A DNA stretch of 64,000 bases, from positions 46,237 through 110,236 of the forward strand of contig NW_002060959.1 in the NCBI RefSeq assembly GCF_000150275.1, written 5' to 3'. The translations under genes were made by a program, and so were the position numbers. The first letter of the stretch is position 1; every line of letters starts with the position of its first letter. Below are positions 20,158-64,000 of this stretch, one piece after another. Source of the stretch: Trichoplax adhaerens (lineage: Eukaryota; Animalia; Placozoa). The notes under the pieces were generated by a model. That model was given only the letters and a program-made list of their open reading frames with translations. It had not been told where the DNA came from and made no database searches.

Positions 20158-20441
20158 TCACTCTTTTCTTTGTATGCAGTATTCCTCTTTCAATTTTTCG
20201 GCCATTTTTCCCTCTCTGCATTCACATAAAACTTTCAATAATGTATCAAGCTTTGTTGTTGAGCTGAATTCAGAATACCATGCCTCCAGCAGACGATCAA
20301 CCTTCCAAAATCTGCTATTATTTGAATCAACTATTTCGTTAATGCTATTCGACGATAAATGCAATTTTCTACCAAATTCGGCCAACTTAGTTGATTCTAT
20401 TTTATCGGCGATATCTATAAAGATGCTACGTCTATTAGAAT
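20158..20441 (-). CDS. Death domain exon (type 2), terminal; phase-1 acceptor
   Basis: Acceptor ctaatag|AT. Translation DSNRRSIFIDIADKIESTKLAEFGRKLHLSSNSINEIV...LLEAWY...TKLDTLLKVLCECREGKMAEKL fits the death-domain pattern. Paralog of 40695-40979. Confidence 0.8.
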
Positions 20442-20820
20442 CTATTAGGGAAGATCAAAATATTTGAACAAATCAATAATGTGGAGGTCATTATTAATTT
20501 GTTGTCATTGCTAAAATTCCGAGTACAGCACATCGTTATTTACCTATAAATTAAAACACTGAAAATCATTGACAATGAACTATTCATTTTTAGGTAGTAT
20601 TCACTTAGCATTGGACTAATGAGCAGATTTTACATTACCAGTGGTTTTAGTATCATAATGACAATTCGAATATGTAACGAAATTATGGCAATGGATTAAT
20701 AGCTTTTAGAACAACGAAATGACTATGCTATAAAAATTATGCTTCGTGAGAAGGCAATATCAAGCTGTTACAAGTTCTCGAAAACTATTTGAGATAAATA
20801 GGTGATCATTACTACTTTAC

Positions 20821-20904
20821 CATCCTGTATTGGATCCATTGTGTTTTGAGTTGCCGTTTCTCCTTGTTGACTAGTCGTAGATTCTTGCATAACTGGTTTG
20901 ATAC
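20821..20904 (-). CDS. 84-nt linker micro-exon (GIKPVMQESTTSQQGETATQNTMDPIQD), phase 1-1
   Basis: ggtag| acceptor and G|gtaaag donor; open frame; homologous to 22007-22090 and to the 63-nt plus-strand exons. Confidence 0.7.
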
Positions 20905-22006
20905 CTACCGATTTACGTTAACAGATGCAAGTAATATATGAAATAAATATGAGAATATTAAATTTTTGGTGTTAAATATTGAAGGCTGTAGGTTCGTTTA
21001 AGTCGCTTGACATGGTATTGCAGCAGGTATTACAACATTATTTTATTCATATCTTTAACAAGCTCTATGTTTACGCACATGTACATATAAAAGCGAAAAA
21101 AGACACAATTTGAAACAAGTCAATAGATTCTATCAACTTGTCTAATTCAGAGTCACTATGTCCTATGATAACAATTGTTAAAATGCCTAAATGAGATCTA
21201 TGTTGAAAGTTTTATCACTATTTGACAATTTATAATATTGCTGGAATATGCGTGATACTCGTGGAACTCCAATTCGAGACGTCGAAACATTATTTTATGG
21301 CATATGAATATAAGATAGCGAATGCAATTGTTACTAATTCACTTGTCGTTATCTTATTCATAGTTAGTAAACTAATTAATATTTAAAACAGTAAAATGGA
21401 TAGAAAGGTTAGATAAACCAGTTTATTCTCACATCAATAGGTTTAAGAGTATCTATCATTGATTGAGACCAAAGCTGCTGTGATACTGATTATATATAAT
21501 TATTATTCGTTAAAATACGATGTCAATTTCAAAATTTATAGTCATAATTGCGAATTTTTGGATTAATGAAAAGAACTTAATATCAAATAGTACCCATCTC
21601 TAGTAGCTTATCCCTTACAAATTACTATGAATGGTATATTCGAGCACTACAAGAATAATTTGTCATACTGTATTGATTGCACATGCTTACTTATAAAAGT
21701 GTCATGAGTGCCTAAACGAGATCTATCTCAAAACTTTTATCACTGCTCGACCATTCGCGATGTTATTGGAGTATGCGTTATACTCATGTAGCTCCAATTC
21801 AAGATATTAAAACATTAAGTTTTAAGTCAATAAGGAGATAAGAAAGCGAAAGCAATTGTAATTATTAATTCACTCGTCTGTAACTTATAATTATTTATAA
21901 CCAATAAAATAATTAACGATTTATGCAGTAAAATATATAGAAAGTCTAGAAAAACGAATTTTTTTTAAGTAAATAGTTTTAATAATAACTACCATTGCTA
22001 ATTTAC

Positions 22007-22090
22007 TATCTTGTAATGGATCTATACCGTTTTGAGTTGTTGTTCCTCCTTGTTGACTGCTTATTGATTCTTGCACCACAGGTGTAATAT
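22007..22090 (-). CDS. 84-nt linker micro-exon (DITPVVQESISSQQGGTTTQNGIDPLQD), phase 1-1
   Basis: ctgtag| acceptor and |gtaaattagcaatgg donor, which is homologous to the donors of the plus-strand copies. Confidence 0.7.
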
Positions 22091-22977
22091 CTACAGATTT
22101 GCGTCGAGTAAGTAACATCTGATTATTTATGAAAATATTGAATTTTAGCTGTGTTAGGTTTTATACATTAAGCGTATAATTTCATTTCAGTCGCTTGATA
22201 TGGAATTATAGCAGCGGTTGCTACATTATTCTATCCATCTACTAAACAAGCTATATATATGCGCACATGTAAATATAAAAAGCTATCGAAAGACACAATA
22301 GGGATCAACTCAATAGATTCTTTCAATTTGTCTAATTTAGAGCTTCTTTGGCTTCTTATAACCTTATTTTAAATCCCTAAATGAGATCTATGTTACAATT
22401 CTATCTCTACTCGAGCATTCACGATGTTACTGGAATATGCGTAATACTTGTGCAGCTGCAATTTAAGGTGTCAAAACATTACTTTTTATGAAATATGAAC
22501 ATAAGAAGGCGAATGCAATTGTAATCATCAATTCATCTATCGCTAAATTACTCATATCTAGTAAACTAATTAACATTTAATGTAATAAAATGAATAGAAA
22601 GGCTAGAAAAGCCAATTTCTTTTTACATCAATAAATTTTAGAGTATCTACTGTTAATTGAAACAAAAACCATTGTAGTACTAGTCAATATTCGTTAAAAA
22701 TTCGATATCAATTTCAAAATTTATAGTTATAATTGTAAATTTTCTTAATTTAGGAAAGAATTTAATATAATTAAGATTTATCTCTAGTGGTTCATCATTC
22801 TACATATTACTGTAAACAGCATATATTTGCGTACTATACACATGAATAATATTGTTTCGCAGGCTCAATTATAAAATTGTCATTCTTTTACATTGACGTT
22901 AAGTCGTATTGACGCTAACACTGAAATGAACGAAGGACTAACAAATTAACGGACGATACGGCCGACTGGAGTAGTGG

Positions 22978-24357: not shown

Positions 24358-27300
24358 TCAACTAGCTATACCTGGCAACATTGTCCACCCATGGACAGAT
24401 CCACATTCGTAAATTTCATCACAATTGCAATATAACAGCTGTGAGCTGCTCTGGACTGGACTATTCACATCAACAAATGTATTGCAATTTGCACACTTTA
24501 TAAAATATAAACAATCTGAATTTTTGCATCTTGGCATCCGTTCCTTAATCAGTGATGATAATTTATTTCGAATAAATATATATGGTGGTTTTTCATTTAT
24601 AAGTTTTTTTACTTTATCTTCTATCTGTCGTTGTAGGCTAGGTTTATTTGACATCATTCGATAGCGATACTTGATACCAATCCAGGAACTTTCTTTTTTA
24701 ACAATAATATCACAACAATATTCTTTCAGACGATATTTTGCACACTTGTAACGTGGCTCAATCTCTGAACTTTGCCATTCTTTATAACAAGATACAAGTA
24801 AACAAAATAATATGCCATCTGGAATATAAGGCATTTGTGGTGGCTTAAATCCTATGTACAGCCATCCCGATGTTTTATATCCTTTGTCATCAAATTCCTG
24901 GCTATTTGAACGAAATAAATAGGGCACGAAATACTGATCAGGACAATTGTCATTTTCATTACTGATCTTGCAAATAATGTCGTACGATTCCATTAAATCC
25001 AACAGAAATTTTCTGTCCTTTTCTTCTACTTCGAGCTTGTCAAATTGGTCATTAATATAGCGTGATGACATAATTCCTGAATCTCGAGCAGCTTCATATT
25101 CTGCGTTTATTCTTAATCCTTTACAAACAGGTTCATCTAACTGAATAATTGTACGGAATATGTTTAATAGCCATTCAACTTGTGTAATAACTTTTCCTTT
25201 AGCAGATTCTTTTTGGCAATAAACAATTTCTCCTAGATCATGCAGATAGAGTAGCATTTGGTGAATATCTTCACTTCCATCGCATAATTGATACTCTTTC
25301 GCTAATTGTTCGATTTCTTCAGCTGCCATAATTCTACTAATTTTTTGATTCAACTTTGTAGAAAATTTTGCCGCTTGTTCGTTAAATCGATCCAAAGAAG
25401 TATGCAGTATAGCTGCCATAATATACCATTTGAATGGAATTTGAGAGAAGTGATCGATAGAAGGTTGATGATTAACAAAATCTCTCATGATATTATGCAA
25501 TTGCCCACAATTTTTTTGACGTTGCAATCGCACTTCTTCGCCATTATCTTCGTCATTACAGTTAAATATTATTTTAGAACCATATATATGATCAGAATAA
25601 GAAGGAAGCTTATTATGAATACATCTACTAAATTTCGAAAATCTTTGCTGACAGGCATTGTTATCACCTATTTTATCAGCATGCGTTCCGACTAAAATAA
25701 CTATAGGCCACGCGATATTTTCTAGAGTACCATTAATTTCCGTTACAGTACGAGCATTGCTTGTGCTACTACCAATAATTGAGGCGAGCCATTCTTGTAT
25801 AGCCTCCAAATATGTCATTTCGGTATCATTGCCGTCTCGATCAACGACATATTTATCTATATCTTGAGACATATCGAGGACTAACATGTAGATACAATTG
25901 CAAGATATAAATGGCTGATGTGTTATGTGATAGATAGAATGGCCAGCAAAATCCCATAGTTTACCATAATGGCAGTCATCTATTCCGATATTTTGGTTGG
26001 ACTCATAGTGACCTCGAAAGTAATTCTCGAGAAATTCTAGAGGGATGGTCTCTTCATCTGCCGATACAGACTCAGAAAAGGTCGACTCCTCATCTTCCAG
26101 TACAGACTCAGAAAAGGTCGACTCTTCATCTGCCGATACAGACTCAGAAAAGGTCGACTCCTCATCTTCCAGTACAGACTCAGAAAAGGTCGACTCTTCA
26201 TCTGCCGATACAGACTCAGAAAAGGTCGACTCCTCATCTTCCAGTACAGACTTATAATAATCTGATAGAACTTGAGATAACTGTATTGCTTGTCGAGTAT
26301 CATAGGAGGAAAAATCTGAAAGCGATTTCTCTAATTTCATTTGGTATTTAATAGTTTCTATTGCTGTAACTACTTTTCTCGCTAGGACAGATATAAACTC
26401 ATCGACCGATTTATTATCGACGTTATATGTAAGTAATTTGATAAGTTCTTTCGTTACTACTGCCGCCGTTGTCGGTCCAATTTTACCAATCAATCCTTGC
26501 CGTGTGAAGGCTTGGATAAGACATGATTTTCCGACATTTTGAGGACCTGTTATCAGGAATCTAATGAAATCATTACGACAAGATCCCTCTTTTCTAGCTT
26601 TTGCATACGCTTCCTTATATTCTTTCTCTTGAGTGAATATAAAATTAAATGTCAAAGAATAATTAATACATTTTACCTCTAATAGATACTTCAAAAGCGT
26701 CACCAGGTATATAATTGGAAAATTACATTTTCATAAATTTCCTGACTTAGTAATATTGCTACAGTAACTATCCATGACATGGTATTGTATATAAAAAATT
26801 GCAACTCTTATCATATCTTGCAAAACTTTCATGCACGAACAACTCAACTTTAAAAGAAGAAAGTTGCACAATTAATGTCGTAGTTACCAATTACGTTCTT
26901 GATCAATGTTCCACATACTTAATAAAGAAACCTGATGTGATTTATAGTAATGTGAAAATTGTTTTCCTATAGTATAACATACCTTCTATGATCTTGGACA
27001 TCGCATTCCTTTCTTGCTTTTCCAGTTCATTTAGGCGTAGAAACGCTACAATAGTATCGCATAAAATTAATATTACAAAGAGGTTGTCGTACTTATTAAT
27101 TCTTATAACAGCTAAAACTATTTTGATGAAGATTATATAATTATAGGTCTTAATAAGCAAAGTAAATACTGTAGTAGGTACTAATCTTATTATCAGATAG
27201 GCAAGTTGATTTACTTTGCTAATACTCGTTTAAGGATGGAAGTAATATTAACATTTCGAAGTCATAGAAATAAATTAAGAGCATATTTAACATGTAACAT

Positions 27301-27808
27301 AAAACGCTCAACAAAAATATTATATTCTACTTTGTTTCAATTTTTTAAAATACTACTATTCAACAATATACTCCCACAACTATCAGTGAATCGCATTCCT
27401 AAGAGCATTCACTAATTTAGTGAATGAGTAAATCAGTTGCGTTCAACAAAGCCATCACATTAATATATGTATGTTACGTATACATAGTTCGTGTACCATG
27501 ATTATAATCGACAATAGAGAACGTATTAAAGATAAAGCAATTTGTCGTACAATAACCTTGATCTCTGTTTATTTCATCGACCATACCACTTTTACCAATG
27601 CGCAATAAAGCATCATTCAGTCGGTCAATGGTAGCGGATAAGCCGTATTTCGTATGCCATTTCTTGAGAAAAGCCATCGCTTGATGATCTTCTATTTTGT
27701 ATTTTGACTTGATAGCCTTGATGTTAATCGAAGGATCTAAGATCGCTGCTAACCTTGTCCAATCCCCTTTAATCCTGACTGCAATGTTGGAAAAGTAGAC
27801 TCTGGGGT
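24358..27808 (-). CDS. Roco-family protein: Death domain - linker - ROC GTPase - COR - Cys-rich tail; no kinase or LRR seen; 5' start unresolved. Exons 27808-27557 (DD), 27045-26983 (63 nt), ~26627-24358 (ROC-COR)
   Basis: ROC motifs G1 GPQNVGKS, G2 GPTT, G3 LWDFAG, G4 VGTHADK. COR signature LLYLHDLGEIVY...WL. C-terminal CANC...CNC..C. DD exon DPRVYFSNIAVRIKGDWTRLAAIL...FLKKWHTKYGLSATIDRLNDALLRIG. All junctions are phase 1; the last acceptor (aag) is less certain. Confidence 0.85.
26050..26252 (-). repeat. Coding minisatellite: 36-nt units alternating A/B (72-nt dimer), ~5.6 units, encoding SVLEDEESTFSE / SVSADEESTFSE
   Basis: GTCGAC recurs at 26081, 26117, 26153, 26189 and 26225. Units of the same type look identical. 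Confidence 0.97.
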
Positions 27809-29791: not shown

Positions 29792-30164
29792 ATGGATAAA
29801 GAGCAACGTCAAGCTATCGTCGATCATTGGGATACACTAGCCGAATCGATGCCCAGTAATCATATGACAAATAGTCTAATTGCAAAAAGAATACTCTCGC
29901 CGACTGATTTACAGGGAATTAATGCCAAAGAAACTGAAAACGAAAAGAATACTACCATTTTGAATAAAATTTTAGCCTCAGTATCGCCTGATTGCTATGC
30001 CATCTTTATTGATGCTTTGAGACAGATTCCTAATAAGAACAGCCGATTAGCAGACATGATTGAAAGCCGTTTTAAGGAACAAGCTTCCGCTGATTATAGA
30101 AGCGACGCTAGTAAATCGAACAATTTATCAAGCGCTCGTAAACGACAAACAGTAGGTCAGTTAG
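29792..30164 (+). CDS. CARD domain first coding exon, copy A (donor at 30164 or alternatively 30155, both phase 1)
   Basis: MDKEQRQAIVDHWDTLAESM...LIAKRILS...I.AKETENEKN..IL.KIL..VSPDCYAIFIDALRQ...LADMIE fits the CARD pattern. Donors G|gtcagt and G|gtaagg. Confidence 0.85.
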
Positions 30165-31212: not shown

Positions 31213-31275
31213 AATCTGAAACTAGTCGACAGGAAGGAACAGCAATGCAAAACGATATGGATCCAATACGAGATG
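31213..31275 (+). CDS. 63-nt linker micro-exon (ESETSRQEGTAMQNDMDPIRD), phase 1-1
   Basis: ttacaag| acceptor and G|gtaagt donor; conserved at 39881 and 60924. Confidence 0.75.
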
Positions 31276-33385: not shown

Positions 33386-33427
33386 GTCGAAAACCGAAAA
33401 ACTCTGAAGATATTAAAAAAGACACAG
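33386..33427 (+). CDS. 42-nt linker micro-exon (GRKPKNSEDIKKDT), phase 1-1
   Basis: tttag| acceptor and ACAG|gtaatt donor; conserved at 41833-41874. Confidence 0.65.
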
Positions 33428-36400
33428 GTAATTACAACTATAGGCACATTTTAATGCTATTATGGGTTCATCACAATTTTAAGAATATTAGTTATCCGTC
33501 TATGGTCGTTAAAATTTAATTATTATTAGGATTTGTCAAACTTTACTTAAAGTTATGTTTATGCAAGATATTTAGCTGTACAGATACTGTAACATGAAAT
33601 GAATACATTCCAGCTAGTGATTGTAACTTATAGTAATTAGGTAATAGAGTCACAACGTACATAAAACTATCACAAATTAAACTTCACTGCGTGGTGATGA
33701 CTATTATTGTATTATCAATGCAGCTTTTCACTTAGTATATAAGATCAAATCTTACCGATACATAAATTTTCATATAAGTCAAACACAATAACATTTCACT
33801 TACAAATAATCAAAGCTGAATTGACGCCTTTTGAGTAAGCATAATCGATTAATTAGTTGTTTTTAATAATTAGTGTTGCTTACAAATGTTTCCTAGATCA
33901 TTTTATGTTATTTTTCTAAAAGTAAGTCTCATAATAACATATTAAGTTACAAGGCATAAATTTACATCTAAGAGCGTCACTGCGTTGTGACACAAGTATA
34001 TGAGGAAAAGCAATCGATTAATTACTCGGTTTCTTGGTAATCTACATGCTATTTTTCATTTTTGTCTTCAGTAAGGCTCAATAATGGGTAGTGTAAAGAT
34101 CGTCTTAGATTCGTATTCCATACATGCAAATGTAATAGAACCTGTTCTACTAACTGCATATAGATCGCAAGGAATAAAAAGAATTTTATAATATCAATAG
34201 TTGGTAATTTCAGATTATTACGTACATTTTTCGTAATTTAATAAGTACAGCTTTTTTCGAAACTTGAGCTCTAAAGGGTACGATGCGCTTACTGAATAGA
34301 AATTGCTATCGTTCATTTTCCAATTAATTTATCGGGCAAAGAATTGTCTTTGCTAATATCGATATCACATTGCACAATTACGACATTTATTTAAAACGTA
34401 ATTTAATTACATTACTTCGCAGTATATGATAAATTCGATAAGATGTCATTTCTTTGCTTAACCTTTTATTTGTGAGCAGCCATTAATAATCATTAATTTA
34501 ACAATTGTGAATCTTATTCAAATCTAAAAGGGGTTGATTCTGAAGACACTCGAAAAGACACAGGTACTTCTATTTAAAGAAACAATTTGATATATTCCGG
34601 AATTCTTTGTAATTTTATTAACAATTTTTATTGAATATAACAGGCGGGATATTTTACGAATTAAAGCAATATTTGAAAAGGGTTGTTCTTTATTTTGTTC
34701 TACCATTTATAATATTAGTTAACCTAATTTATCTCTATTTACGTTACAAGTGGTAATAAAGTATCCGCAGCTAAAATTTTTTGAATCTCTAAGATGCGCA
34801 TTAAATGGTGTATATTATCTTATATGACATGAAAGTCACATTAGGAAACTTTAGTTAGGAAATAGAAAATAAGATGAAAATTGGCAGAGGTTGTGTTCAT
34901 TGTTAGGTAGTTAGACTATTATTTTTATGACTAAATCTTGATGTTTAAAGGTTACTCTTTAGACTTTTATAATGTATTGATGATAGAAATTACGTTAGAA
35001 GTGAAGTTTGATGTATTTTATAGTTAACTTGTTGGTTTTATAATGTTTTGTAAGGGAATCATAGGGTAAATTGTGTCTGATCTTTGAATGATTTTTGTTT
35101 TCTTAAATTGTGCAAAGTAGTTTTCTAAAATGGATCTTGAGAGTAATTGGTTAGTAAATGTTTAGTTTTGCATACCTGTGACAGCTCTGCGAAGCCTATA
35201 AATGATAGCGCTATTAGAAAATTTAGAAGGCGAGTAGAAGAAGATTGTTTTGAAGAACTTGTTGAATTTAAAAGGCATTCTGGGTCGAATTGTCGTAAGT
35301 TAAAACGTGCTACTTTTTGAAAGGTTGTTTGGCTGTTGACAGTTTTAAGTTTGTCACTTATTTTATTAATACTTAAAGTTAAATATTTGTAAGGTTGTTC
35401 GGTTGATACTTCTCTCCATTTTTTTTTGTGTAATAAATTGTTCGATTATTTCCCCAAGTTCTATTTGGTGTGAAAGTTTCGTCAAGTCGACCGGAGTGTA
35501 ATGAAAGTAGAATCAATGTTTGTTAAAGTTTTGTAGCTTGATCTCTACACTTTTCATTTCATTACACAGGTATATTACAAGATAATAAATGATTTATAAG
35601 CTATTGCTAGTAATATGGAATATGTGTATCAAATGACTAAACTTGATAAATTTAACAGTTACACGAGTGCATAATGATCACAATTCATTACTTACAGTAG
35701 AAATCACTGAAGTTATAATATGCTAGAATGAATCATATATTGTACTGTTGCTATGATCTTACAGATTGCATCGACATGCGACAAGTGGCTATAAAGCATC
35801 CGCAGCTAAAATTTTTAGAATCTCTAAGATGTACTTTAAATGGTGTATATTATCTTACATTGACTACAGTATTTTAAAATCGGATTTGAGACCTTTAATA
35901 AAAGATTTCTAGCATTTATCCATCCTTCATGACCATCTCCGTGTAGATTGTTACATGAAATGTTCTTTTCAGCTTAAGCCCATTCGTGATTCGTCGATCC
36001 TAACGAAACAAATTACCGCTTGTGATTCCATTCTTTAATTGCTCTTTGTGATGTGTCTACTTAAAAAATTGATTTGAAGCCAGATGTTTGTGAAAGTAAT
36101 AATATCGAATCGTCTTATAAGCAAGCCGTGTATCCTTTACATAAATGGGATGAAAATTAAAAAAAATAAAGGTCCAGTGTAGCTTTAGCTATTTCCTGTT
36201 GACAGTTTCAAATAGAACTATAAATATGCTTGAAAATGGATGCAATTAAACGGTAATAAATTGTGAGCAATTTAATCCAATCTTTTACCAAGAAGGCACT
36301 CGATGCAGTAAACTACGGATATTGGCGATAAATAAATTCCGAAATTATTCAAATATGTCAGAAAGCTGATCATAAAAGCTTAAAGATAAGCTTATAATTA

Positions 36401-37422: not shown

Positions 37423-37795
37423 ATGGATAAAGAGCAACGTCAAGCTATCGTCGATCATTGGGATAAACTAGCCGAATCGATGCCCAGTAATCATATGACA
37501 AATAGACTAATTGCAGAAGGAGTACTTTCGCCGACTGATTTACAGGGAATTAATGCCAAGGAAACTGAAAACGAAAAGAATACTACCATTTTGAATAAAA
37601 TTTTAGCCTCAGTATCGCCTGATTGCTATGCCATCTTTATTGATGCTTTGAGACAGATTCCTAATAAGAACAGCCGATTAGCAGACATGATTGAAAGCCG
37701 TTTTAAGGAACAAGCTTCCGCTGATTATAGAAGCGACGCTAGTAAATCGAACAATTTATCAAGCGCTCGTAAACGACAAACAGTAGGTCAGTTAG
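37423..37795 (+). CDS. CARD domain first coding exon, copy B
   Basis: Near-identical to 29792-30164 (7 substitutions seen), with the same donors. Confidence 0.85.
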
Positions 37796-38339: not shown

Positions 38340-39375
38340 TGTCACAAACCAGCTTCGTGACAAGGATAACGTAAAACAAATCTCTAAATTACTATAATCT
38401 CCTGGATTCAGTATCCCTTAACTATCTCACAAGAATTTAGACACCTTTGATTCTACGTTAAACTCAACTAGACAAATTGAGAACTACTTGTCATGGTGCG
38501 CCGTTACTAATTAAGTAACTGTTGATTAATGAATGCTTATGAATAGATAAGATAAGGTTATGTGCTATGTTTAATGCGCTTATAGCTGATAATAGGATAT
38601 TAGAAATGAGATAAAAATAGAAGTTGTTAACAGTTAATTTACTGTAGGTTTATAAGTTGTGTTAATCTCTAAAAATTGAGCCGTACATGGACGATGGTTA
38701 AGCGTCTTAACACCTGATAGCTTGTAGCTATCTAAGTCTGAGAATATCGACATGTATATTTAGTAATGGTATTATACTAATTAATGTAACTTGTAAAGTA
38801 TGAATTCTCACTCGTTAATATTGGAATTCACTGTAGAAACCTATTTAAGCGCGTGTGTTTGTAGAATAAAGTAAGTAATTGCTCATGAAACGGCAAGACT
38901 CATATCGTGAAGAATAGTGTAACAATTAGTCAGTTGTCTGTGGAGATCAGCCGAGAAATCGAGTTCTCAAATACTTCTCTCATAGAAACTGAAAGTACTG
39001 GGAGAAATAGCCCAAGTTTTAAGTAACTACACTAGAGTTCTTTACTTTCCTTTGACACAAGTGAGGGTTGTGACACTACTTTATTCAACTATCTGACGGG
39101 CTTATATACCCTTCTACAGCAGCTAACATTCACGAGTTATCTTATAAAAATACTTAGGTGAGAACATCTACCTAACTAATTTTTCACAGTCAGACTACAA
39201 TATGTCCATTCACAGAATCATTTCAGTGCACATTACAGCACAGCATTAAATTTACTGAAACACATTTATAATTAGAGTAATTCCTATTGTAAGTAACTAG
39301 TTGTAATATAATATCACTATATTATATTAACCAAATTTAGATATCTATTTCTTCACGGTAGTTCGTACCATGACA
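38340..39375 (-). mobile_element. Solo LTR (outer; ~444 bp after removing the nested insert)
   Basis: Absent from paralogous introns (30700, 43400, 59530). TGTCAC...ATGACA termini; minus-strand TATATAAG (~39102-39109) and AATAAA (39080-39085). Imperfect TSD (taaat/ccaat). Confidence 0.75.
38489..39075 (+). mobile_element. Solo LTR (inner, 587 bp) nested in the outer LTR
   Basis: TGTCAT...GTGACA termini; perfect 5-bp TSD CTACT (38484-38488 and 39076-39080); TATTTAAG then AATAAA at ~38842-38870. Confidence 0.85.
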
Positions 39376-39880: not shown

Positions 39881-39943
39881 AATCTGAAACTAGTCGACAG
39901 AAAAGAACAGCAATGCAAAATGCTATGGATCCAATACGAGATG
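39881..39943 (+). CDS. 63-nt linker micro-exon (ESETSRQKRTAMQNAMDPIRD), phase 1-1
   Basis: cacaag| acceptor and G|gtaagt donor. Confidence 0.75.
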
Positions 39944-41832: not shown

Positions 41833-41874
41833 ATCAAAAACCGAAAAACTCTGAAGATATTAAAAAAGACACAG
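41833..41874 (+). CDS. 42-nt linker micro-exon (DQKPKNSEDIKKDT), phase 1-1
   Basis: tttag| acceptor and ACAG|gtaatt donor. Confidence 0.65.
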
Positions 41875-47301: not shown

Positions 47302-49229
47302 CCACTTTAGACAAGATTTCAATCATAAGAGTCTAAAAATTGAGCTACTGAATTGCAATGATCATTCTTCATTCAAGATAACACAAAGACCGATAGCCAA
47401 AGTGCTACGAAAGCTATCCAGAATGTAAATACTGCAATTCATAACTTGATCAAGCCTGTTGAGACTATTGTTAATTGAAGCACTAAAATATTATTTTCTG
47501 CACTTACGCCATCTTAGGAATTAGATTGTATTATACACTAAGAGTAAATTTCCAGTGATATCTTTGAAGATTACTTTCACTAAGGGTTATGATATTATTT
47601 GTTTTCCTATAATTTCTATAGCCATAGAGCTATTAGTAACTATAATAACGTACAGTAATAATACTATATAGAGATATTAAAGCATTGCTCTAGAAATTAT
47701 AGTAATGGCAATGAAGTAATTATACTTACGGCAATATTTTGAATTTACTTCAATGTTTTCATTAATATTCTCCTTTAAGCTCCTCTATATGGCTTAATTG
47801 TATAATGTAAGGGCCATTTTATATATGGCATTGTTTATGTATTATATTCACTATATTCAAAGTTCTCTGCCAAATTTACAATTTAGGTGGCCGCATGGTG
47901 ATTGGAATCTCTCTGGTAATAGTTATTGCTATCCTGTACATTCGTTTTAGCCAGGATTAGAAAGGGAAGCATTAATTACTTTTATATGTTTTAGTTTTCC
48001 GTCATTATTGAATTATACAGTATTCTACATGCCATTCCATATTTTAAAATGTTTTGCAAGTTATATCGCCGAAAGGTGTTGAACATTAATTGTAGAGTAG
48101 CCATATTTTAAGTAGAATAATTCGGATTGTACAAGGTAATGATGTTCTATTTTAAGAAAAGTGTTCTGTTTGATGACTCAGTTCTGATTATAGTTAATTA
48201 TGTTATCATTAATAGATTTAACGAAATGTATTTGAGGTTCGCGTAGATGAGCTTACCATAGAGAGAGGCTGTACTTCACTTTGAGCTCGGAATACTTTGG
48301 ATTTTAGACTAGGTTCCTTTAGTAATTAATTATTACTCTACTATTCCTAAAACCTTGTAATAAAAATCTTTTCGAAAATTCTATTCGACTAAGACAGTTT
48401 TTTGTACGACAATTTTATTACACTTATCAGTAACAGAATTTGAGTTATGAAATGGAAACTGGTAAAGAAAGTTACAGTGTTAGGTGAGTGAAAGGAACTC
48501 ACGGCATAGCATGAAAAATAGCAGGAAGGAACAGATATTGAACTTCTGCTTGTCATTATTTTCTAGCTCGACTTGCTTTTGTAATTGCCGCTAACAATTG
48601 ACATTGTCAATTTGTCGATGAAATTAGACTGTATCATCTACCACCAATTTATTCATGTCGTATATGATTCGTGATACTACATGAGTCACGTAAGAAATCT
48701 TGTATAGTGTGAAAAGTAATACAAAGTTTATTAGGGAAACTGTATCGTAAAAATATAAGACAGATTTAATAGGAAGTATAAATCTGTAAGCGTAAATCTG
48801 TGTAGGTGATCGTAAGATGGTCCAAGTATAAGTGCAGAATGGAGGTAGAATGCAAGAGAAGGATTAATGTAAAATTATACCAGTCGAAAATAAAGAACTG
48901 CTCAGAAAGGCTACAAAACTAGAAAACTATTCACATAATACCAAACATTCATTCGTAAAGTATATGATTTTTCCATTACTACGTATACTGTATACTCATC
49001 GTATTCCAATATCACTCTAAAATCTGATAGCTATTAATATGCATATACACGTATGCTAACCGCGGTAACTGCAATATTCGATACGCGTAGATCTGTTCAT
49101 TACTGTAAATTTACGACGTTAATAATAGTCTTCCTGTCGAAATAGTTCATCGAAATCATAATGAATTAATGCAAAAACCAAAAAATTAGATTTTTAACAC
49201 ATTTAGGATAAAGATAACAATTATCATCT

Positions 49230-54503: not shown

Positions 54504-54779
54504 CTGCACAACGCTATTTTAACCTGATTATCAAAGATATTGGCGCAGAATGGAAAGACTTAGCTAGAGTCCTAGATTTTGATCAGACCCGAATTAAAAC
54601 TATTAAAGCCAATAATTCTCTCGATGTCAATGACCAATGTGCGGAGATGTTACATGTACAACATAATACGAAAGGGAAAAGTTTCAACAAGTTAGAGCTA
54701 ATTAAAGCTCTCTATAAAGCTAATTTAGCTGCAGTTGCAGAAAAGATAAACATAGATCATGAGATAACCCAAGATCCTG
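54504..54779 (+). CDS. Death domain exon (type 3), 276 nt, phase 1-1
   Basis: gatag|CT acceptor and G|gtaaat donor. Translation AAQRYFNLIIKDIGAEWKDLARVLDFDQTRIKTIKANN...DQCAEML...LIKALYKANLAAVAEKI. Confidence 0.85.
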
Positions 54780-58030: not shown

Positions 58031-58176
58031 GTAAGCGCTGCTTTCTCGTAATTTACAACTATATTTGCTGATATAACGTTTATACATTATCGTCTTTATG
58101 TCTAATCATTAAAACTATCTTCAACACTGCAGTGCAAATAATCAAAATATGTATATCTCTTTTTACATAACGATAG

Positions 58177-58452
58177 CTGCACAACGCTATTTTAACCTGA
58201 TTATCAAAGATATTGGCGCAGAATGGAAAGACTTAGCTAGAGTCTTAGATTTTGATCAGACCCGAATTAAAACTATTACAGCTAATAATCTTCTCGATGT
58301 CGATGACCAATGTGCGGAGATGTTACATGTACAACATAATACGAAAGGGAAAAGTTTCAACAAGTTAGAGCTAATTAAAGCTCTCTATAAGGCTAATTTA
58401 GCTGCAGTTGCAGAAAAGATAAACATCGATCATGAGATAACCCAAGATCCTG
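58177..58452 (+). CDS. Death domain exon (type 3), second copy, 276 nt, phase 1-1
   Basis: Same splice sites as 54504-54779; differs at KANNSLDVND vs TANNLLDVDD. Confidence 0.85.
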
Positions 58453-60923
58453 GTAAATATCGTCATTGTTTAATATTTTTACTTGACGTAGAAGATAGAG
58501 AATATCTCGTAGAAAATTGTTAATTAACTACTATACTAATATGAATATTAGAGTTATTGCATCATAAATTAAGATTAGTATCGAAACAGCAGTAGAGTTG
58601 ATCACTAGGATAACTAATATTTACAGTATAATGAAATTAATTAATGAAAGATAAATATGTACAATTACTGCTTGAATTTAAAAAACCCTATAGGTAGTGG
58701 AAGTCAGAAAGCATTAAGCACTAATAAAGATCAAGGTCAAGTACATAAAATTGTTCGTTTAAAATAACTAGAATATATTCAATCAAAGAGTAGGACATAG
58801 ATCATATTGTATAACTGCTAATAGCGTGCTAATTATGTTATAAATCTGCAATAAGCAGATTACACTATCAGGCGTCTGATAGTAATTAGAAATACTCGGA
58901 GGATGCGCCAGCCTTATAAAAATATGCTGGTTATAAGAATCGCTTTAGATGGGTATGAATTCATACGGGTACATCATAACATGCTAAAGCAGTAATAATT
59001 AGTATACAAATCGATTCGAATGCAGAGATCACCTTAGTGAAAGTTAAACGTAAACGTAATCTACAAATCATCACAAAAACTCATTTTGTGACAATTCCAT
59101 ACATGCAAACTGAAATAAATCTGTCCTACCAACTCTACTTACGCTATTAAAATTAAACATTTCTTAACATCGAACTTAATTTTGGGGTTATACCGTAGCC
59201 ATGGACTCTCATTCGTGCATATACACTGTTCTATTTATTTGACTCACCAGCATCTCTTAGGTATAAAAATTGATTGATTTCATCAATAAAGATAGTGGTA
59301 GTAGGGACTGAAACCTGTAATTGACGATTATGAAACAACTGTAATATTTTAAATCAGTTTTAAGGAAGTATTTTAGTATTTCGTTGTATTTGCAATCGTC
59401 AGCAGTCTAAATTGACGAATAGATCGCGTTGAACTTAAGATTCTTAATTCTGCTATGCTTATAACATAATTACTTGGTTACTTGTGTAAATGGCATCATA
59501 TACGCAGTAAATATGACTGATCTTTCTAGTTGTCATCAGTATACTGTACTGATACGTTAACATTGAGCTATAGCTGCTATCTATTTCCACTAATTAAATT
59601 AAAACTCTGCTATAGCTTTATTAAACAATTGACTTGGAAAAATAATATAATTGAAGGCTACTATTAATTTTAAACTTTCTAACATGTATTAAAAGCATCA
59701 GTTTACATCAAATAGATTATGCGCTATTTTTGTTAACCATTACCTCTTAATAAGTAAGAAAAATTTTAGCATTTGCGCGGGTAACAGCAAAATAATCATT
59801 AATGAATAAGATACCAGTTTTTTGATACAGATTATTCCAAAATAATTACACATCCCCTACTACCCAACCCAACAATATAAAGCGCTTATCTTAAATACAA
59901 TCGCTTTTAATTAGAATTAGCGCANAAGAAAAAAAGATATAGCTTCTATCANAACTGTAGCTTTTCTCGAACTTAAACATCTATTTAATATTTTAGATAA
60001 GCCACCCAAAACGTCCTCAGGATCAAATGACTCAGAGCATCGTANNNNNNNNNNNNNNNNNNNNNNNNNNNNNNNNNNNNNNNNNNNNNNNNNNNNNNNN
60101 NNNNNNNNNNNNNNNNNNNNNNNNNNNNNNNNNNNNNNNNNNNNNNNNNNNNNNNNNNNNNNNNNNNNNNNNNNNNNNNNNNNNNNNNNNNNNNNNNNNN
60201 NNNNNNNNNNNNNNNNNNNNNNNNNNNNNNNNNNNNNNNNNNNNNNNNNNNNNNNNNNNNNNNNNNNNNNNNNNNNNNNNNNNNNNNNNNNNNNNNNNNN
60301 NNNNNNNNNNNNNNNNNNNNNNNNNNNNNNNNNNNNNNNNNNNNNNNNNNNNNNNNNNNNNNNNNNNNNNNNNNNNNNNNNNNNNNNNNNNNNNNNNNNN
60401 NNNNNNNNNNNNNNNNNNNNNNNNNNNNNNNNNNNNNNNNNAAACGATCAGAGTAGAGAATAGTACATCAACTACATAATGAAATTAGATTTTCAATTTA
60501 CAGTTTTGTTATACTGTACTCAACTAAATCAATAATTGGTATTTCAGCTTATTACGCACAGAACGAGTACCGGTAATTAATAATATAGCTTTTTCGTAAT
60601 TTAGAAAGTACAGCTTTTTCCGAAACTTTAGCTGTAAAGGGCCTATGATAGCTAAAATTGCTCTATCGCAAGTCAATTGATAGAATCTGTTGCATCGATC
60701 AAAGTAATCCCTACTTTACAGCTCCTGTATTTGCATGCACTTAAAATAGAGCTCATTTAAAGATCGAATAGTGTTAAAATACCTACAAGGGTATTACATT
60801 GAGCCTATTAAACAAACTTATGTGTTTAATATGTATGAGTAGAAAGCGAATATTTTGGTATTAATGCATGTTTTACTCATTTCTGTTAACGCAAATTGAT
60901 ACGTCTTGGGTCTATTTTGCAAG

Positions 60924-60986
60924 AATCTGAGATTAGTCGAAAGGAAGGAACAGCAATGCAAAACGCTGAGAATTCAAATCAAGATG
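60924..60986 (+). CDS. 63-nt linker micro-exon (ESEISRKEGTAMQNAENSNQD), phase 1-1
   Basis: tgcaag| acceptor and G|gtaagt donor. Confidence 0.72.
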
Positions 60987-61601
60987 GTAAGTTAGTAATG
61001 GTCATCTATTCATCGTAATTAGTTTCCTTGCATACATATAAGATTAGGTTATGCCACTTACTAACATAAGACTAAAATATGTGTGTTAGTCTAATATTAG
61101 CTTAGACGACATGAAAATAAATAAATCAATTAAGATTATAGATTGTATTGTTTGATCGAAGTAACTAATGAATTAACTATTTGATAGAGTAAATTTAGAA
61201 AATAGACCGGTAACTAATTTTATAGAGGAAGTATTTAGCATTACAGCTTTTACCAAACTAATCTGCTAATAATTCTACCTTTAGTGTAATTAAACATTAA
61301 GTTGCTTTTCTGGAAGTTAAACACTTACGAGTATAGCGCCAAGTATTATGAGTTATCGATACAATTAGTTAGGCGATAAAAGCAATAAATATTATCATCA
61401 GTATCAGGCAAGAGATTTCTTGGCTAGTACCGATTCTGAATTCAAGGTACTATCTGATCTAGGAATTTTCCTTTTTTCATGGTGCATATAATAAATTTTC
61501 CAGTTAATAATTCGCTATACTGTAGTCTGTACAATATCATGTACAATCTTCGTAATACATAATTTGGTATTGCTCATATTAAACATGTTTCCTGTTAACA
61601 G

Positions 61602-61658
61602 GAACGGATATCACTAATCAGCCACATGCAATCATCGATCAACCAAAGAAAAAACGCC
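61602..61658 (+). CDS. 57-nt micro-exon ending in a PKKKR NLS-like motif (GTDITNQPHAIIDQPKKKR), phase 1-1
   Basis: ttaacag| acceptor and C|gtaagt donor; length divisible by 3; open frame. Confidence 0.62.
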
Positions 61659-62971
61659 GTAAGTTATTTATCACCGTAAATAAAGGCCTAATCAACAAAT
61701 CATCACGAAAACACGTTTTAGGGCAATTCCATACATGCAAACTGTAACAAATCTGTCGTACTGACTCTACTTACCATATAATCACGCAAAGAATTTTATA
61801 ATAACAGATTACATTGCTGATTTTCTAGCAATTGTGATACTATGTAATAGTAAAATCAGCTGACGGATGAAGAAAAAATTTTCGATAACATTAAGAAAGG
61901 AGAACTAAGAACGATAATAACAGTGAATATAGCTGCTTAAATACGTTACCTAACTTGTTTATAACTTGAAAATTGCAAAGAACATCACTTAACACTTACA
62001 GAACTTAATACGAGAGAAAAATTCTATGATTAGTATTACATTTTACAAAGCTAAAATTTATATACTTGAATCATTACAAGCATCACTTTAACTTATATAA
62101 TCTATTATAAATATTGTCAACAGTCCTAAACTTCGGTATTATTTTTAAGTCATATCTAATTTACTTCTACTTAACATGTTGACAACAATAACTTATCTAA
62201 CATCTCCAATTCACGTTTACTCTACAGTAGATATCACAGTGCTTAAAGAGTATGCTGCGATTAAAGTATGATTCTATACATGTATCGGTAATACAGTTTC
62301 GCATGTAATGGCCCAAATACGATACTTAGGAAAGTATATAAATTATAATTATTAGTATTATTAATTGTAAGATACGTACTGTACTCGTACATATCAAAAC
62401 TGCACTGTATAAGAGAGCTTACAATTTACAAGGCGATCCAGGTTTGTTGCAAGTGATCATTCAAAGTCTTAACTTCTTGCAACAACTCCCACATTATGTT
62501 GCAATTTTTTTGTAGTCTCATAAGTACTAAATATAGGAATCTATCATACAAAACGTTACAAATCTAACCAACTAAGTAACTATGGAAGGCATTATATCAA
62601 TCCTTATCGCTCTGACGTCTTTTCTAGTTACTAGACTTTAAGAAAAACTGAAAATTAATCTTGAAACATTATCAAACATTTTTGTATAGTAACTAGGACA
62701 GTTTTTCGTCGTTAACGTAAACAAATTATATTTCATTGCAGACGCTATACAATATAGCATTTTACATTATTGGAGTGTTGTTAATAAGCCCTTTATAAAG
62801 GATAGCGTTTTACTACGAAATCTGAATTGTAATCTAGAAATGCTGTCTAGCTCTCTTTCCTTAGAACTCGTAGGTAATTGCTAACATTTTCAGCCTATCC
62901 ACGAATTTGTGATACAAGATTTNNNNNNNNNNNNNNNNNNNNNNNNNNNNNNNNNNNNNNNNNNNNNNNNN

Positions 62972-63459
62972 NGGGACTACACTTCTTTGACCGTCACTAG
63001 GTTACTCGATTACACAAGTAGTTGAGCGCAGGCTTTTGAACAGATAACTATCACTACAGTTTATTCTTTTCTATGCCTTTCTCCTCGTCCACATGGCATC
63101 ATAGTTAGCCTTTATATACTTTCTAAGATATTTACTATTTACATTAATCTCACGTAGGAGATCTCACAACCATAACCTCCTATCCAGTAATAATCTTACA
63201 ACACGACTACAAATCGTGTCAGCATAAACAACTCTCTAACACAAAGGTTGCACATCATCAAGATTTATATTTATCTAGCCTATCCTCCTATTCGAATACA
63301 TACAAAATAACTAAGGACAGTTGATCATCAAAACACCTTACTAACAAACATCATAACACATCAATTTCCATCAATAACAAACACCATAACACTTCAATTT
63401 CTATCTATAACAAACACCATAACACTTCTAACTCATCACGGCAAAAAGGTACCGTGACA
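62972..63459 (-). mobile_element. LTR fragment (other end lost in the gap)
   Basis: Ends GGTACCGTGACA (reverse complement TGTCACGGTACC, like TGTCATGGTAC of the outer LTR). It abuts catatctaatt, which continues as a copy of the 62151+ intron sequence. Minus-strand TATA (~63113) and AATAAA (~63060). Confidence 0.65.
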
Positions 63460-64000
63460 CATATCTAATTTACTTCTACTTAATATGTTGACAACAATAA
63501 CTTATCTAACATCTCCAATTCACGTTTACTCTACAGTAGATATCACAGTGCTTAAAGAGTATGCTGCGATTAAAGTATGATTCTATACATGTATCGGTAA
63601 TACAGTTTTGCATGTAATGGCCCAAATACAATACTTAGGAAAGTATATAAATTATAATTATTAGTATTATTAATTGGTCAGTAAGAGAATTTATATCATT
63701 ATAAGATTTGGTTAAGTCATTTACGATATACAAAATCGTAACAACTAGATATATACGATCTAATATACTACATCGTAACTAGTGATTATAGTTGGTTAAA
63801 GGCGCTTGCACTTCATCCTAGACAACCCTAAAATCGATAGCCAAAGGACTTTGTCAGTCTCTTTGACTACGTATACAAATACTACAATTAATAGCTCAGT
63901 TAAGCCTGCACCGACTACTAATAATCGAGGTAACTAGTATGTTACTTCTATACTTAAGCTAACTTAGGGCTCTTGTAGATTTATAATCTGACTATTTAAT

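What the first reader, a model, noticed from the sequence alone, without database searches (positions are those of the whole stretch)
20158..64000. Exon-cassette-shuffling CARD / Death-domain / Roco locus (candidate innate-immune or cell-death diversification system)
Seen: over 44 kb there are two CARD first exons, five death-domain exons of three sequence types, about ten linker micro-exons (42, 57, 63 and 84 nt) and one single-exon ROC-COR module. Every internal DD and linker exon except the 68/74-nt pair is phase 1-1 with length divisible by 3. The CARD exons end in phase 1 and the ROC-COR exon starts in phase 1, so cassettes can be added, skipped or swapped in frame. Paralogous segments A (29.7-34 kb), B (37.3-44.5 kb), C (59-64 kb) and the inverted copy (20-23 kb) each carry a different cassette set. 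Known: death-fold domains assemble signalosomes by homotypic binding; symmetric exons are the substrate of exon shuffling; Roco expansions with CARD/DD N-termini have been reported in placozoans. Inference: the locus produces a variable repertoire of CARD-linker-DD adaptors and DD/CARD-Roco GTPases through recombination and/or alternative splicing. The plus-strand cassettes have no terminal exon here and may splice to another ROC-COR exon beyond the right edge.
Basis: partly seen in the sequence, partly recalled or inferred. Interest (0 to 1): 0.88.

Follow-up and report, generated by a model that had tools for sequence, protein, structure and literature searches.

The report
Exon-shuffled death-fold and Roco gene cluster
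This stretch of the placozoan Trichoplax adhaerens genome is a fast-evolving tandem cluster of cell-death/immune-type genes (one Death-Roc-COR-Death GTPase and several CARD/Death adaptor genes) built from one-domain exons that all share the same reading-frame phase and have been duplicated, lost and inverted between gene copies over evolutionary time; nothing shows that the animal mixes them on the fly.

Summary
The window (Trichoplax adhaerens, C1398:46237-110236) has two CARD first exons, five Death-domain (DD) exons of three types, about ten linker micro-exons and one 2,256-nt ROC-COR exon. Every boundary I could check is phase 1.

- Gene B is transcribed and spliced in one order: CARD, 63 nt, DD, 42 nt.
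- Gene B has a terminal exon inside the window (47887-47960). It encodes a hydrophobic tail anchor. An independent Trichoplax sp. H2 gene model joins DD, 42-nt exon and this tail.
- No second COR domain lies on the 1.3-Mb scaffold, so no ROC-COR exon waits beyond the right edge. A 12-kb gap does.
- Copies A, B and C, both flanks and a paralogous cluster on scaffold C1392 differ by whole cassettes: DD present or absent, a duplicated 84-nt linker, an inverted and now dead CARD2.
- This is germline exon shuffling in a birth-and-death gene cluster. Four runs gave no exon-skipping joint and no recombination signal.

Roco genes with CARD/DD domains are published for this species. This scan reached the same reading on other DNA of this genome. 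New here are the unannotated genes and the tail-anchored CARD-DD adaptor.

The parts
20158..20441 (-). Terminal Death-domain exon (type I') of the Roco gene; stop codon at 20158-20160
   Evidence: Pfam Death hit. Open phase-1 exon ending in a stop. 53% aa identical to B's DD. Inverted paralogue of 40616-41065.
20821..20904 (-). 84-nt linker exon, phase 1-1 (candidate)
   Evidence: AG/GT-bounded open phase-1 exon. Its core is related to the adaptors' 63-nt exon. Lies in the repeat unit 20807-21663. No RNA was laid here.
22007..22090 (-). Second 84-nt linker exon: tandem duplicate of the linker cassette (candidate)
   Evidence: The unit 21993-22855 is 73% identical to 20807-21663.
24372..26627 (-). 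Single ROC-COR exon, 2,256 nt, phase 1-1
   Evidence: Pfam Roc 37 bits and COR-A 51 bits. 69% identical to TRIADDRAFT_61412 and 61414. Splice sites read. dN/dS 0.16-0.28 against paralogues.
26050..26252 (-). 72-nt-period minisatellite (2.8 copies, 100% match) encoding an acidic Ser-rich insert inside the Roc domain
   Evidence: TRF; translation.
27557..27808 (-). Death-domain exon type III, 252 nt, phase 1-1, upstream of ROC-COR
   Evidence: Pfam Death; splice sites and frame read.
29792..30164 (+). CARD first exon of gene A (ATG at 29792; ends in phase 1)
   Evidence: Pfam CARD. 98% nt identical to B's exon. An in-frame stop lies just upstream of the homologous ATG in B.
31213..31275 (+). 63-nt linker exon of A
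   Evidence: 94% copy of the RNA-verified exon of B, with intact AG/GT.
33386..33427 (+). 42-nt linker exon of A
34531..34563 (+). 33-nt linker exon (GVDSEDTRKDT)
   Evidence: Matches the annotated exon of TRIADDRAFT_61417. The RNA loose end GGTTGATT after a 42-nt exon fits this copy, but also fits the C1392 copies.
37423..37795 (+). CARD first exon of gene B
   Evidence: Pfam CARD. The GT..AG joint 37795|39881 is seen in runs X5 and X9.
38340..39075 (.). High-copy transposon-like insertion with terminal inverted repeats, in intron 1 of B
   Evidence: Word depth up to about 1e5 in X1. Many contigs break at 38338/38340 and 39075. The insertion is absent in copy A and in one X13 contig. Terminal inverted repeats.
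39881..39943 (+). 63-nt linker exon of B
   Evidence: RNA joints on both sides.
40695..40979 (+). Death-domain exon type I of B, 285 nt
   Evidence: RNA joints on both sides. Pfam Death. 94/94 aa identical to H2 protein P0029.
41833..41874 (+). 42-nt linker exon of B
   Evidence: RNA joint 40979|41833; splice sites.
43778..44297 (-). Inverted two-exon CARD2 module, now a dead cassette with an in-frame stop in its second exon, inside B's last intron
   Evidence: tblastn with TRIADDRAFT_61417. Inverted relative to C1392 47519-48114.
47887..47960 (+). Terminal exon of B: a hydrophobic segment of about 16 residues, five polar residues and a stop (tail anchor)
   Evidence: RNA contigs run from the 42-nt exon into GGCCGCATGGTGA. 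That 13-mer occurs in the window only at 47889, directly after an AG. H2 model P0029 ends with the identical 24 residues. The exon has only two copies genome-wide.
54504..54779 (+). Death-domain exon type II, copy 1 (276 nt, phase 1-1)
   Evidence: 96% copy of a left-flank segment.
58177..58452 (+). Death-domain exon type II, copy 2
59993..60044 (+). Start of a CARD2 exon of copy C, running into the assembly gap 60045-60441
   Evidence: Collinear with the intact left-flank CARD2 and with the inverted copy at 44186-44353. Inferred by coordinate mapping.
60924..60986 (+). 63-nt linker exon of C
61602..61658 (+). 57-nt linker exon candidate of C
   Evidence: AG/GT-bounded open phase-1 exon; no RNA was laid here.

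Best explanation
The locus is one of several germline-evolving tandem clusters of death-fold genes in Trichoplax adhaerens. Every domain sits in its own exon, or exon pair, bounded by phase-1 introns. Unequal or illegitimate recombination within introns has therefore duplicated, deleted, inverted and moved whole cassettes between neighbouring genes without breaking frames. This is classical exon shuffling combined with gene birth and death.

The living genes in the window are these.
1. A minus-strand Roco gene, DD - Roc-COR - two 84-nt linkers - DD, under purifying selection. I infer that it acts as a nucleotide-switched scaffold that exposes Death domains.
2. Plus-strand gene B, a protein of about 278 residues: CARD - linker - DD - linker - C-terminal tail anchor. 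It is transcribed and constitutively spliced. I infer that it is a membrane-anchored, RAIDD-like bridge between DD-bearing partners (its DD is a paralogue of the neighbouring Roco gene's terminal DD) and CARD-bearing partners such as CARD-caspases.

The rest is less complete. Gene A (CARD - 63 - 42 - 33 nt) has no recognised 3' end. The two DD-II exons are duplicated 5' parts of a multi-DD gene. Copy C continues across gaps, probably into 42-nt and TIR-like exons. Several cassettes are dead relics. Diversity arises between gene copies over generations, not within an individual.
For: Shown:
- Domain content and coordinates.
- GT..AG joints for CARD, 63 nt, DD and 42 nt in two RNA runs, with a 342-nt contig matching B with no other letters over its DD part and one (39904) in the 63-nt exon.
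- The terminal tail exon, supported by an RNA loose end unique to 47889 in the window and by the independent H2 protein TrispH2_011880, which joins an identical DD, a 42-nt exon and an identical tail.
- Phase 1 at all verified boundaries and in the annotated paralogues.
- Cassette-level differences between copies: DD cassette indel, linker duplication, CARD2 inversion with a stop codon, CARD2a relics.
- The same gene layout on scaffold C1392 at 68-93% identity.
- ROC-COR dN/dS of 0.16-0.28.
- A genome-wide family: 110 Death, 24 CARD and 49 COR-A hits, most COR hits lying in open frames of 700-800 codons.

From the literature: at least 17 Trichoplax ROCO genes with CARD, DD, TPR and LRR domains (PMC4104024); two CARD-caspases in placozoans (PMC6321704).

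Inferred: the binding partners, membrane anchoring and signalling role.
Against: - RNA was laid on only 6 kb, and only as assembled contigs. These drop rare isoforms and cannot phase paralogues, so alternative cassette use is not excluded.
- One transcript junction joins two 42-nt-type exons directly. No adjacent exon pair in the assembly explains it.
- RNA contigs over the 5' half of B's CARD exon look A-like, so which CARD exon feeds B's transcript is not phased.
- The 13-mer that links the 42-nt exon to the tail exon also occurs in the left-flank paralogue.
- Recent copies show no clear purifying selection: CARD A versus B has pN/pS 0.65 on only 7 differences.
- The assembly here is full of gaps. 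Expression of the Roco gene and of A, C and the DD-II exons was not tested.
Confidence: 0.75

Rival explanations
1. Active repertoire generator. The phase-1 cassettes are combined within an individual, by alternative or cassette splicing or by splicing across neighbouring genes (for example A's promoter and exons feeding into B's 63-nt, DD, 42-nt and tail exons). This would yield many CARD/DD adaptor isoforms.
For: All exons are frame-compatible. A has no recognised terminal exon, yet its last exon has a phase-1 donor. One RNA junction joins two 42-nt-type exons, which in the left paralogue would need skipping of a 63-nt+DD pair. The H2 model of the C1392 gene includes a 57-nt exon that the T. 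adhaerens model skips, although the exon is present in the DNA.
Against: For B, four runs show only the constitutive joints, with no skipping joint and no foreign loose end at the acceptors among the rows shown. The 42-to-42 junction can come from copies hidden in the 12-kb gap. The difference in the 57-nt exon may be only an annotation difference. B's CARD exon has an in-frame stop just upstream of its ATG, so A cannot read into it.
Confidence: 0.1
2. Assembly artefact. A, B and C (and some flank copies) are diverged haplotypes or mis-scaffolded repeats of one or two genes, so the apparent variety of cassettes is allelic or spurious.
For: There are four gaps in the finding, a 12,134-N gap at the right edge, and both clusters lie at scaffold ends. 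Copies are 90-97% identical. RNA shows two variants of B's DD-to-42-nt junction (ATCA and GTCA), which could be alleles. At 37466 every run reads C where the reference has A.
Against: The tandem order (A-like 3' part, intergenic stretch, CARD exon) recurs in the C1392 cluster. Copies differ by kilobase indels, an inversion and 4-18% divergence, far above the roughly 1% expected between alleles (the 1% figure is from my own knowledge). Independent samples hold B-specific intron and exon sequence. H2 has B's DD and tail on its own contig.
Confidence: 0.08
3. Mostly dead DNA: a decaying cluster of pseudogenes and exon relics with no current function.
For: The inverted CARD2 carries a stop, and CARD2a relics carry stops in A, B and the right flank. 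A lacks a 3' end. The window's genes are absent from both public annotations. Young copies have pN/pS near 0.65-0.95.
Against: The ROC-COR exon is intact over 752 codons with dN/dS 0.16-0.28. B is spliced in RNA from two studies. B's DD and tail are 100% conserved at the protein level in Trichoplax sp. H2.
Confidence: 0.05

Closest known systems
Trichoplax adhaerens ROCO expansion (Civiero et al. 2014, PMC4104024), e.g. TRIADDRAFT_61412, 61414, 61416 on scaffold C1392
   Same: A single-exon Roc-COR core 48-69% identical to these three, a C-terminal Death domain after a short linker exon, and phase-1 introns.
   Different: The window's gene is not in the public protein sets. It has one DD on each side, a duplicated 84-nt linker cassette, and a young acidic minisatellite inside Roc.
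RAIDD/CRADD (CARD-DD adaptor of the PIDDosome); Trichoplax paralogue TRIADDRAFT_61417 and its H2 orthologue, annotated 'CRADD'
   Same: N-terminal CARD plus C-terminal-side DD in a small adaptor. The CARD exon is 87% identical to TRIADDRAFT_61417.
   Different: Gene B has micro-exon linkers and a C-terminal hydrophobic tail anchor, and it lacks the second CARD of 61417. Orthology to vertebrate CRADD was not tested.
MAVS (CARD adaptor tail-anchored to mitochondria and peroxisomes)
   Same: An N-terminal CARD and a single C-terminal transmembrane segment followed by a few residues. This is a resemblance in architecture only, recalled from my own knowledge.
   Different: No sequence homology was shown. 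B carries a DD, which MAVS lacks. No proline-rich or TRAF-binding region was examined. RIG-I-like receptors are reported absent from placozoans (PMC6321704).
DAPK1-type Roco proteins (Roc-COR followed by a Death domain)
   Same: Roc-COR with a C-terminal DD.
   Different: No kinase, ankyrin or LRR domains. There is an additional N-terminal DD.
[quoted passage not shown] 2012)
   Same: A ROCO family expanded in clusters, with same-phase modular exons duplicated and exchanged between paralogues, proposed as immune-receptor diversification.
   Different: There the shuffled units are 72-nt phase-2 LRR exons, and alternative splicing is documented. Here the units are phase-1 death-fold and linker exons, and no alternative splicing was seen.
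Domain grafting of death-fold exons in invertebrate immune genes (lophotrochozoan RLRs, PMC8998645)
   Same: CARD, DD or DED domains each encoded by one exon, and gained or lost between sibling paralogues.
   Different: A different host gene family and phylum. Here the exchange links adaptors with a Roco GTPase gene.

Membership tests
Roco (ROCO) GTPases | Roc GTPase domain directly followed by a COR domain in one polypeptide | tested here: met
   Pfam Roc 37.0 bits (cut-off 27) and COR-A 51.1 bits (cut-off 35.3) in the single 781-aa open frame. 69% identity to annotated Trichoplax Roco proteins.
Roco (ROCO) GTPases | Intact nucleotide-binding motifs (P-loop GxxxxGKS, DxxG, G4) | tested here: inconclusive
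   Read from the translation: GPQNVGKS and DFAG are present, with GTHADK at the G4 position. Roc is split by an insert of about 150 aa that includes a minisatellite. No biochemical or structural test was done.
Roco (ROCO) GTPases | COR-B subdomain | not tested
   No COR-B family appeared at E<=0.1. The 150 residues after COR-A are conserved among paralogues, but I did not fold them.
RAIDD/CRADD-like bipartite death-fold adaptor | One CARD and one Death domain in a small non-enzymatic protein | tested here: met
   CARD and Death exons are joined in RNA.
RAIDD/CRADD-like bipartite death-fold adaptor | Orthology to CRADD, and binding to PIDD and caspase-2 | not tested
   Only the name given to the H2 paralogue. 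No phylogeny or binding test was done.
Tail-anchored membrane proteins (MAVS-like topology) | A single hydrophobic segment within about 30 residues of the C-terminus and no signal peptide | tested here: met
   The terminal exon encodes a hydrophobic stretch of about 16 residues, then 5 residues and a stop. The same C-terminus is in H2 protein P0029. Membrane insertion itself cannot be tested here.
MAVS family | Sequence homology to MAVS CARD and signalling downstream of RIG-I-like receptors | not tested
   The phmmer search of 1.84 billion representatives with the CARD exon returned 13 hits; the seven I scanned carried CARD, DD or TIR domains, and that library holds no names, so none was checked against MAVS. 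RLRs are reported absent in placozoans (PMC6321704).
Exon shuffling by symmetric phase 1-1 modules | Domain boundaries coincide with same-phase introns, and paralogues differ by whole exons with intronic breakpoints | tested here: met
   Phases. DD cassette indel 40088-41260 with intronic breakpoints shared by A and C. An inverted linker+DD pair shared between the Roco and adaptor genes.
Regulated cassette-choice loci (Dscam-type, protocadherin-type, or brown-algal ROCO alternative splicing) | Multiple alternative joints from or to the same exon in RNA of one organism | tested here: not met
   Only constitutive joints for B in four runs. The junction variants differ by single bases and fit paralogues or alleles. 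Contigs can hide rare isoforms, so this is weak negative evidence.

The most novel reading that the evidence does not exclude
The cluster is a working sensor-adaptor module unique to placozoans. A DD-Roc-COR-DD GTPase (standing in for the missing LRR-NLRs and RLRs) would signal through a neighbouring CARD-DD adaptor that is tail-anchored to an organelle membrane like MAVS. Frame-compatible cassettes would be used combinatorially, by cassette skipping or by A-to-B read-through splicing, to vary the adaptor set within an animal.
Probability: 0.1. Interest if true: 0.75.

Novelty: new member of a known kind. Interest (0 to 1): 0.42.

Why it matters
Placozoans lack LRR-type NLRs, RIG-I-like receptors and cGAS-STING (PMC6321704). 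They have instead expanded Apaf-1-like, Roco and death-fold genes. This locus shows at base-pair resolution how such a repertoire grows. Each domain is one exon, all introns are in phase 1, and whole cassettes have been gained, lost, duplicated or inverted between neighbours, including exchange between a GTPase gene and adaptor genes.

The window also adds genes missing from the public annotation. The most notable is an expressed CARD-DD adaptor with a C-terminal membrane anchor, conserved in Trichoplax sp. H2. It is a concrete candidate for organelle-based death-fold signalling in an early-branching animal. The result also cools the stronger claim: there is no evidence for a splicing-based or somatic diversification system.

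Tried and rejected
- ROC-COR exon beyond the right edge: rejected. The only COR-A hit on the 1.33-Mb scaffold is the window's own. The right flank starts with a 12,134-N gap.
- Invertible-cassette idea for the inverted CARD2: no flanking inverted repeats beyond chance-size matches, and the inverted copy carries a stop.
- 108-nt phase-1 candidate exon at 42635-42742 (copy at 63822-63929): no joint and no X5 or X9 depth, so I do not count it.
- DD-DD binding between B's DD and the Roco terminal DD: complex prediction gave 'no answer' (score 0.02). This is no evidence either way.
- Protein Atlas look-alikes of the H2 DD-tail protein: generic Death-domain clusters only, all below 0.8.
- Short N-terminal and linker exons of the Roco gene: tblastn with the paralogues' short exons found nothing convincing. 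The exons between 27557 and 26627, and the first exon, remain unresolved. The 63-nt candidate at 27045-26983 is unsupported.
- Literature search on 'death domain / exon shuffling / phase 1 / CARD' returned only cardiology papers. No paper links MAVS to Trichoplax in substance.
Exons were searched one by one by reference, and the joined product was compared with P0029 only by reading.

Full report
**Origin and context.** The window is G000:C1398:46237-110236 of a 105.6-Mb genome in 1,414 contigs. Its best protein matches are Trichoplax adhaerens proteins, so this is the placozoan reference assembly. DNA is about 30% G+C, with short exons and AG/GT introns. Genome-wide six-frame Pfam searches give 110 Death, 24 CARD and 49 COR-A hits. 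Most COR hits lie in open frames of 700-800 codons, often beside a Death exon. The window is therefore one of several clusters of a large family. The literature already reports at least 17 T. adhaerens ROCO genes carrying CARD, DD, TPR or LRR domains (PMC4104024; quoted in PMC11378527).

**Observation.** In window coordinates:
- Death hits lie at 20185-20421(-), 27564-27788(-), 40727-40951(+), 54515-54748(+) and 58188-58421(+).
- CARD hits lie at 29810-30064(+) and 37441-37695(+).
- The only COR-A hit on the whole 1.33-Mb scaffold is inside the 781-codon open frame 24358-26703(-), which also scores for Roc.
- The five DD exons fall into three types.
- Self-BLAST confirms the paralogy: A 29632-30700 = B 37263-38327 (96%); A 31609-32728 = C 61803-62922 (97%); A 33005-33822 = B 41453-42269 (94%); 53649-55384 = 57313-59078 (93%); 20076-20520 is an inverted 68% copy of 40616-41065.

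**RNA evidence.** I had one read-laying run and used it on 37400-43399 with four runs. Runs X5 and X9 show three GT..AG joints:
- 37795|39881
- 39943|40695
- 40979|41833

A 342-nt contig spans the end of the CARD exon, the 63-nt exon and the DD exon; its DD part matches B with no other letters, and its only difference is 39904 A>G in the 63-nt exon. Gene B is therefore transcribed and spliced as CARD (ATG 37423 to 37795), then 63 nt (39881-39943), DD (40695-40979, 285 nt) and 42 nt (41833-41874). Each internal exon is phase 1-1 (sequence).

**B's terminal exon.**
- After the 42-nt exon, contigs run on into GGCCGCATGGTGA. In the window this 13-mer occurs only at 47889, directly after an AG.
- In phase 1 that exon reads a hydrophobic stretch of about 16 residues, five more residues and a stop at 47958-47960. 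This is a tail anchor.
- The same 13-mer is present in the one other genomic copy of this exon, in the left flank. RNA alone therefore does not assign it to B.
- However, the annotated Trichoplax sp. H2 protein TrispH2_011880 (P0029, 143 aa) consists of part of the 63-nt exon, a DD 94/94 identical to B's, a 42-nt exon and a C-terminus identical to the window's tail exon.
- B therefore encodes a CARD-DD adaptor of about 278 residues with a C-terminal membrane anchor.

**The Roco gene (minus strand).**
- The ROC-COR exon runs from 26627 to 24372. It starts after an AG, at codon position 2, and ends one base into a codon before a GT. It is 2,256 nt and phase 1-1.
- Upstream lies a 252-nt phase 1-1 DD exon (27808-27557).
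- Downstream lie two 84-nt linker candidates (22090-22007 and 20904-20821) inside a tandem repeat. After them comes a terminal DD exon, 20441-20158, ending in a stop.
- These exons follow the pattern of the annotated paralogues on C1392. There, P0001 and P0005 are Roc-COR, then a linker of about 100 nt, then a terminal DD, with phase-1 introns.
- Against those paralogues the window's ROC-COR exon has dN/dS of 0.16-0.28, so it is a constrained gene.
- Its 5' end is unresolved. No RNA was laid on it.

**Cassette differences between copies.**
- B's segment 40088-41260, which holds the DD exon with about 600 bp of intron upstream and 280 bp downstream, has no counterpart in A or in C. Both share the same two breakpoints. 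The left-flank paralogue keeps the segment.
- The Roco gene's linker+DD pair is an inverted paralogue of the adaptors' 63-nt+DD pair.
- The 84-nt linker cassette is tandemly duplicated.
- C1392 has two DD exons on each side of its ROC-COR where the window has one.
- A two-exon CARD2 module sits in plus orientation and is intact in TRIADDRAFT_61417 and in two left-flank copies. In B's last intron it is inverted (44297-43778) and carries an in-frame stop.
- Degenerate CARD2a relics with stops follow the 42-nt exon in A, B and the right flank.
- The window segment 37.7-58.8 kb is a 90-97% copy of the left flank (contig 11.8-39.3 kb). The whole layout recurs on C1392 at 68-93% identity.

Together this is the signature of repeated intronic recombination in a tandem family. 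The uniform phase 1 keeps the frames intact, and some cassettes are left to decay.

**What is not supported.**
- No exon-skipping or alternative joint was seen for B. The three single-base variants of the DD-to-42-nt junction fit, in turn, the reference B (ATCA), the H2-type form (GTCA, matching P0029) and the left paralogue (GTCG).
- One junction joins two 42-nt-type exons directly and remains unexplained. It could reflect skipping of a 63-nt+DD pair in the left paralogue, or copies hidden in the 12-kb gap.
- RNA contigs over 37476-37603 differ from B at 4-5 positions and look A-like. At 37466 all runs read C where the reference has A. The CARD exon that feeds B's transcript therefore cannot be phased.
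- No repeats flank the inverted module.
- Contigs drop rare variants, so alternative splicing is not excluded. It is simply without evidence.

**Gaps.**
- Gap 45361-45750 lies in B's last intron among tandem repeats. No frame crosses it, and the H2 model bridges it functionally.
- Gap 55385-55434 separates two tandem copies of a 3.4-kb unit bearing the DD-II exon.
- Gap 60045-60441 interrupts a CARD2 exon of copy C. Its flanks are collinear with a left-flank copy at matching spacing (520 versus 522 bp), so the order is supported, but the frame is unreadable.
- The flanks of gap 62923-62972 are not collinear with any paralogue.
- Immediately right of the window lie 12,134 N. Beyond them come a 42-nt exon, a CARD2a relic and TIR-like exons. 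This is where copy C most plausibly continues.

**Annotation status.** Neither the ROC-COR exon, nor the CARD exon, nor a search seeded from the 87%-identical paralogue TRIADDRAFT_61417 returned a protein from this window. These genes are therefore absent from the public T. adhaerens protein set. Only the H2 fragment P0029 represents gene B.

**Function (inferred).**
- Death-fold domains assemble by homotypic contacts. This is established knowledge.
- B has the CARD+DD logic of RAIDD, plus a MAVS-like tail anchor.
- B's DD is a paralogue (53% aa) of the neighbouring Roco gene's terminal DD.
- I therefore propose a membrane-anchored bridge between DD-bearing Roco or multi-DD proteins and CARD-bearing effectors. 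Two CARD-caspases are reported for placozoans (PMC6321704).
- A structure-based binding test returned no verdict.

Exons were searched singly by reference.
- Earlier notes of this scan on other pieces of this genome (s1-807334, s1-734994) describe phase-1 modular ROCO/CARD arrays with exon swaps and no evidence of mixing by splicing. I reached the same reading here independently.

**Verdict.** The locus is a new member of a known kind: an exon-shuffled, birth-and-death immune-type gene cluster within the published Trichoplax Roco and death-fold expansion. The tail-anchored CARD-DD adaptor is its most interesting new element.

Noticed in passing
window 4520-6789 (-): Exons of a polyketide/fatty-acid-synthase-like gene (ketoacyl-synthase N and C domains, KS-AT linker, acyltransferase). 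The segment 3429-8793 is duplicated at 95-97% about 80 kb downstream on the same scaffold (right flank).
   Followed up: partly
window 38340-39075: A high-copy element of about 736 bp with imperfect terminal inverted repeats (TGTCACAA...TTGTGACA), inserted in intron 1 of gene B. Word depth reaches about 1e5 in one run. It is absent from copy A and from one RNA-run contig.
   Followed up: partly
window 26050-26252: A perfect 72-nt-period minisatellite (2.8 copies) inside the Roc domain, between the P-loop and the DxxG motif. It encodes an acidic, serine-rich repeat.
   Followed up: partly
window 41837-41876 (RNA contigs of X5 and X9): Transcripts in which a 42-nt-type linker exon is followed directly by a second, GTCG-type 42-nt exon. 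No adjacent pair of such exons exists in the assembled 160 kb.
   Followed up: partly
window 37466 and 37476-37603: All four runs read C where the reference has A at 37466 (Lys versus Thr). RNA contigs over the 5' half of B's CARD exon carry 4-5 differences and resemble copy A. This could be a strain difference, gene conversion or an assembly error.
   Followed up: no
L015 (C1392) about 49244-49300: A 57-nt phase-1 exon is included in the Trichoplax sp. H2 model of the CRADD-like gene (P0028). The T. adhaerens model (P0012) skips it although the exon is present in the DNA. This is either a cassette exon or an annotation difference.
   Followed up: partly
right of the window: C1398:110237-122370: A 12,134-N assembly gap starts at the first base after the window. 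The first 160 kb of the scaffold hold eleven runs of five or more N and are a mosaic of 85-98% identical segments.
   Followed up: yes
window 45893-46252: A 178-bp tandem repeat (2 copies, 97% match) directly right of the gap at 45361-45750. A 253-bp duplication (44522-44774 = 45106-45359) lies directly left of it.
   Followed up: no
left flank L002-L003 (window -34.4 to -19.1 kb): The left paralogue of gene B appears to carry, in order: a CARD1 remnant, an intact CARD2, 42-nt, 63-nt, DD-I, 42-nt, a TIR-like exon, an inverted CARD2 and the only other copy of the tail-anchor exon. This suggests a CARD-DD-TIR tail-anchored relative.
   Followed up: partly
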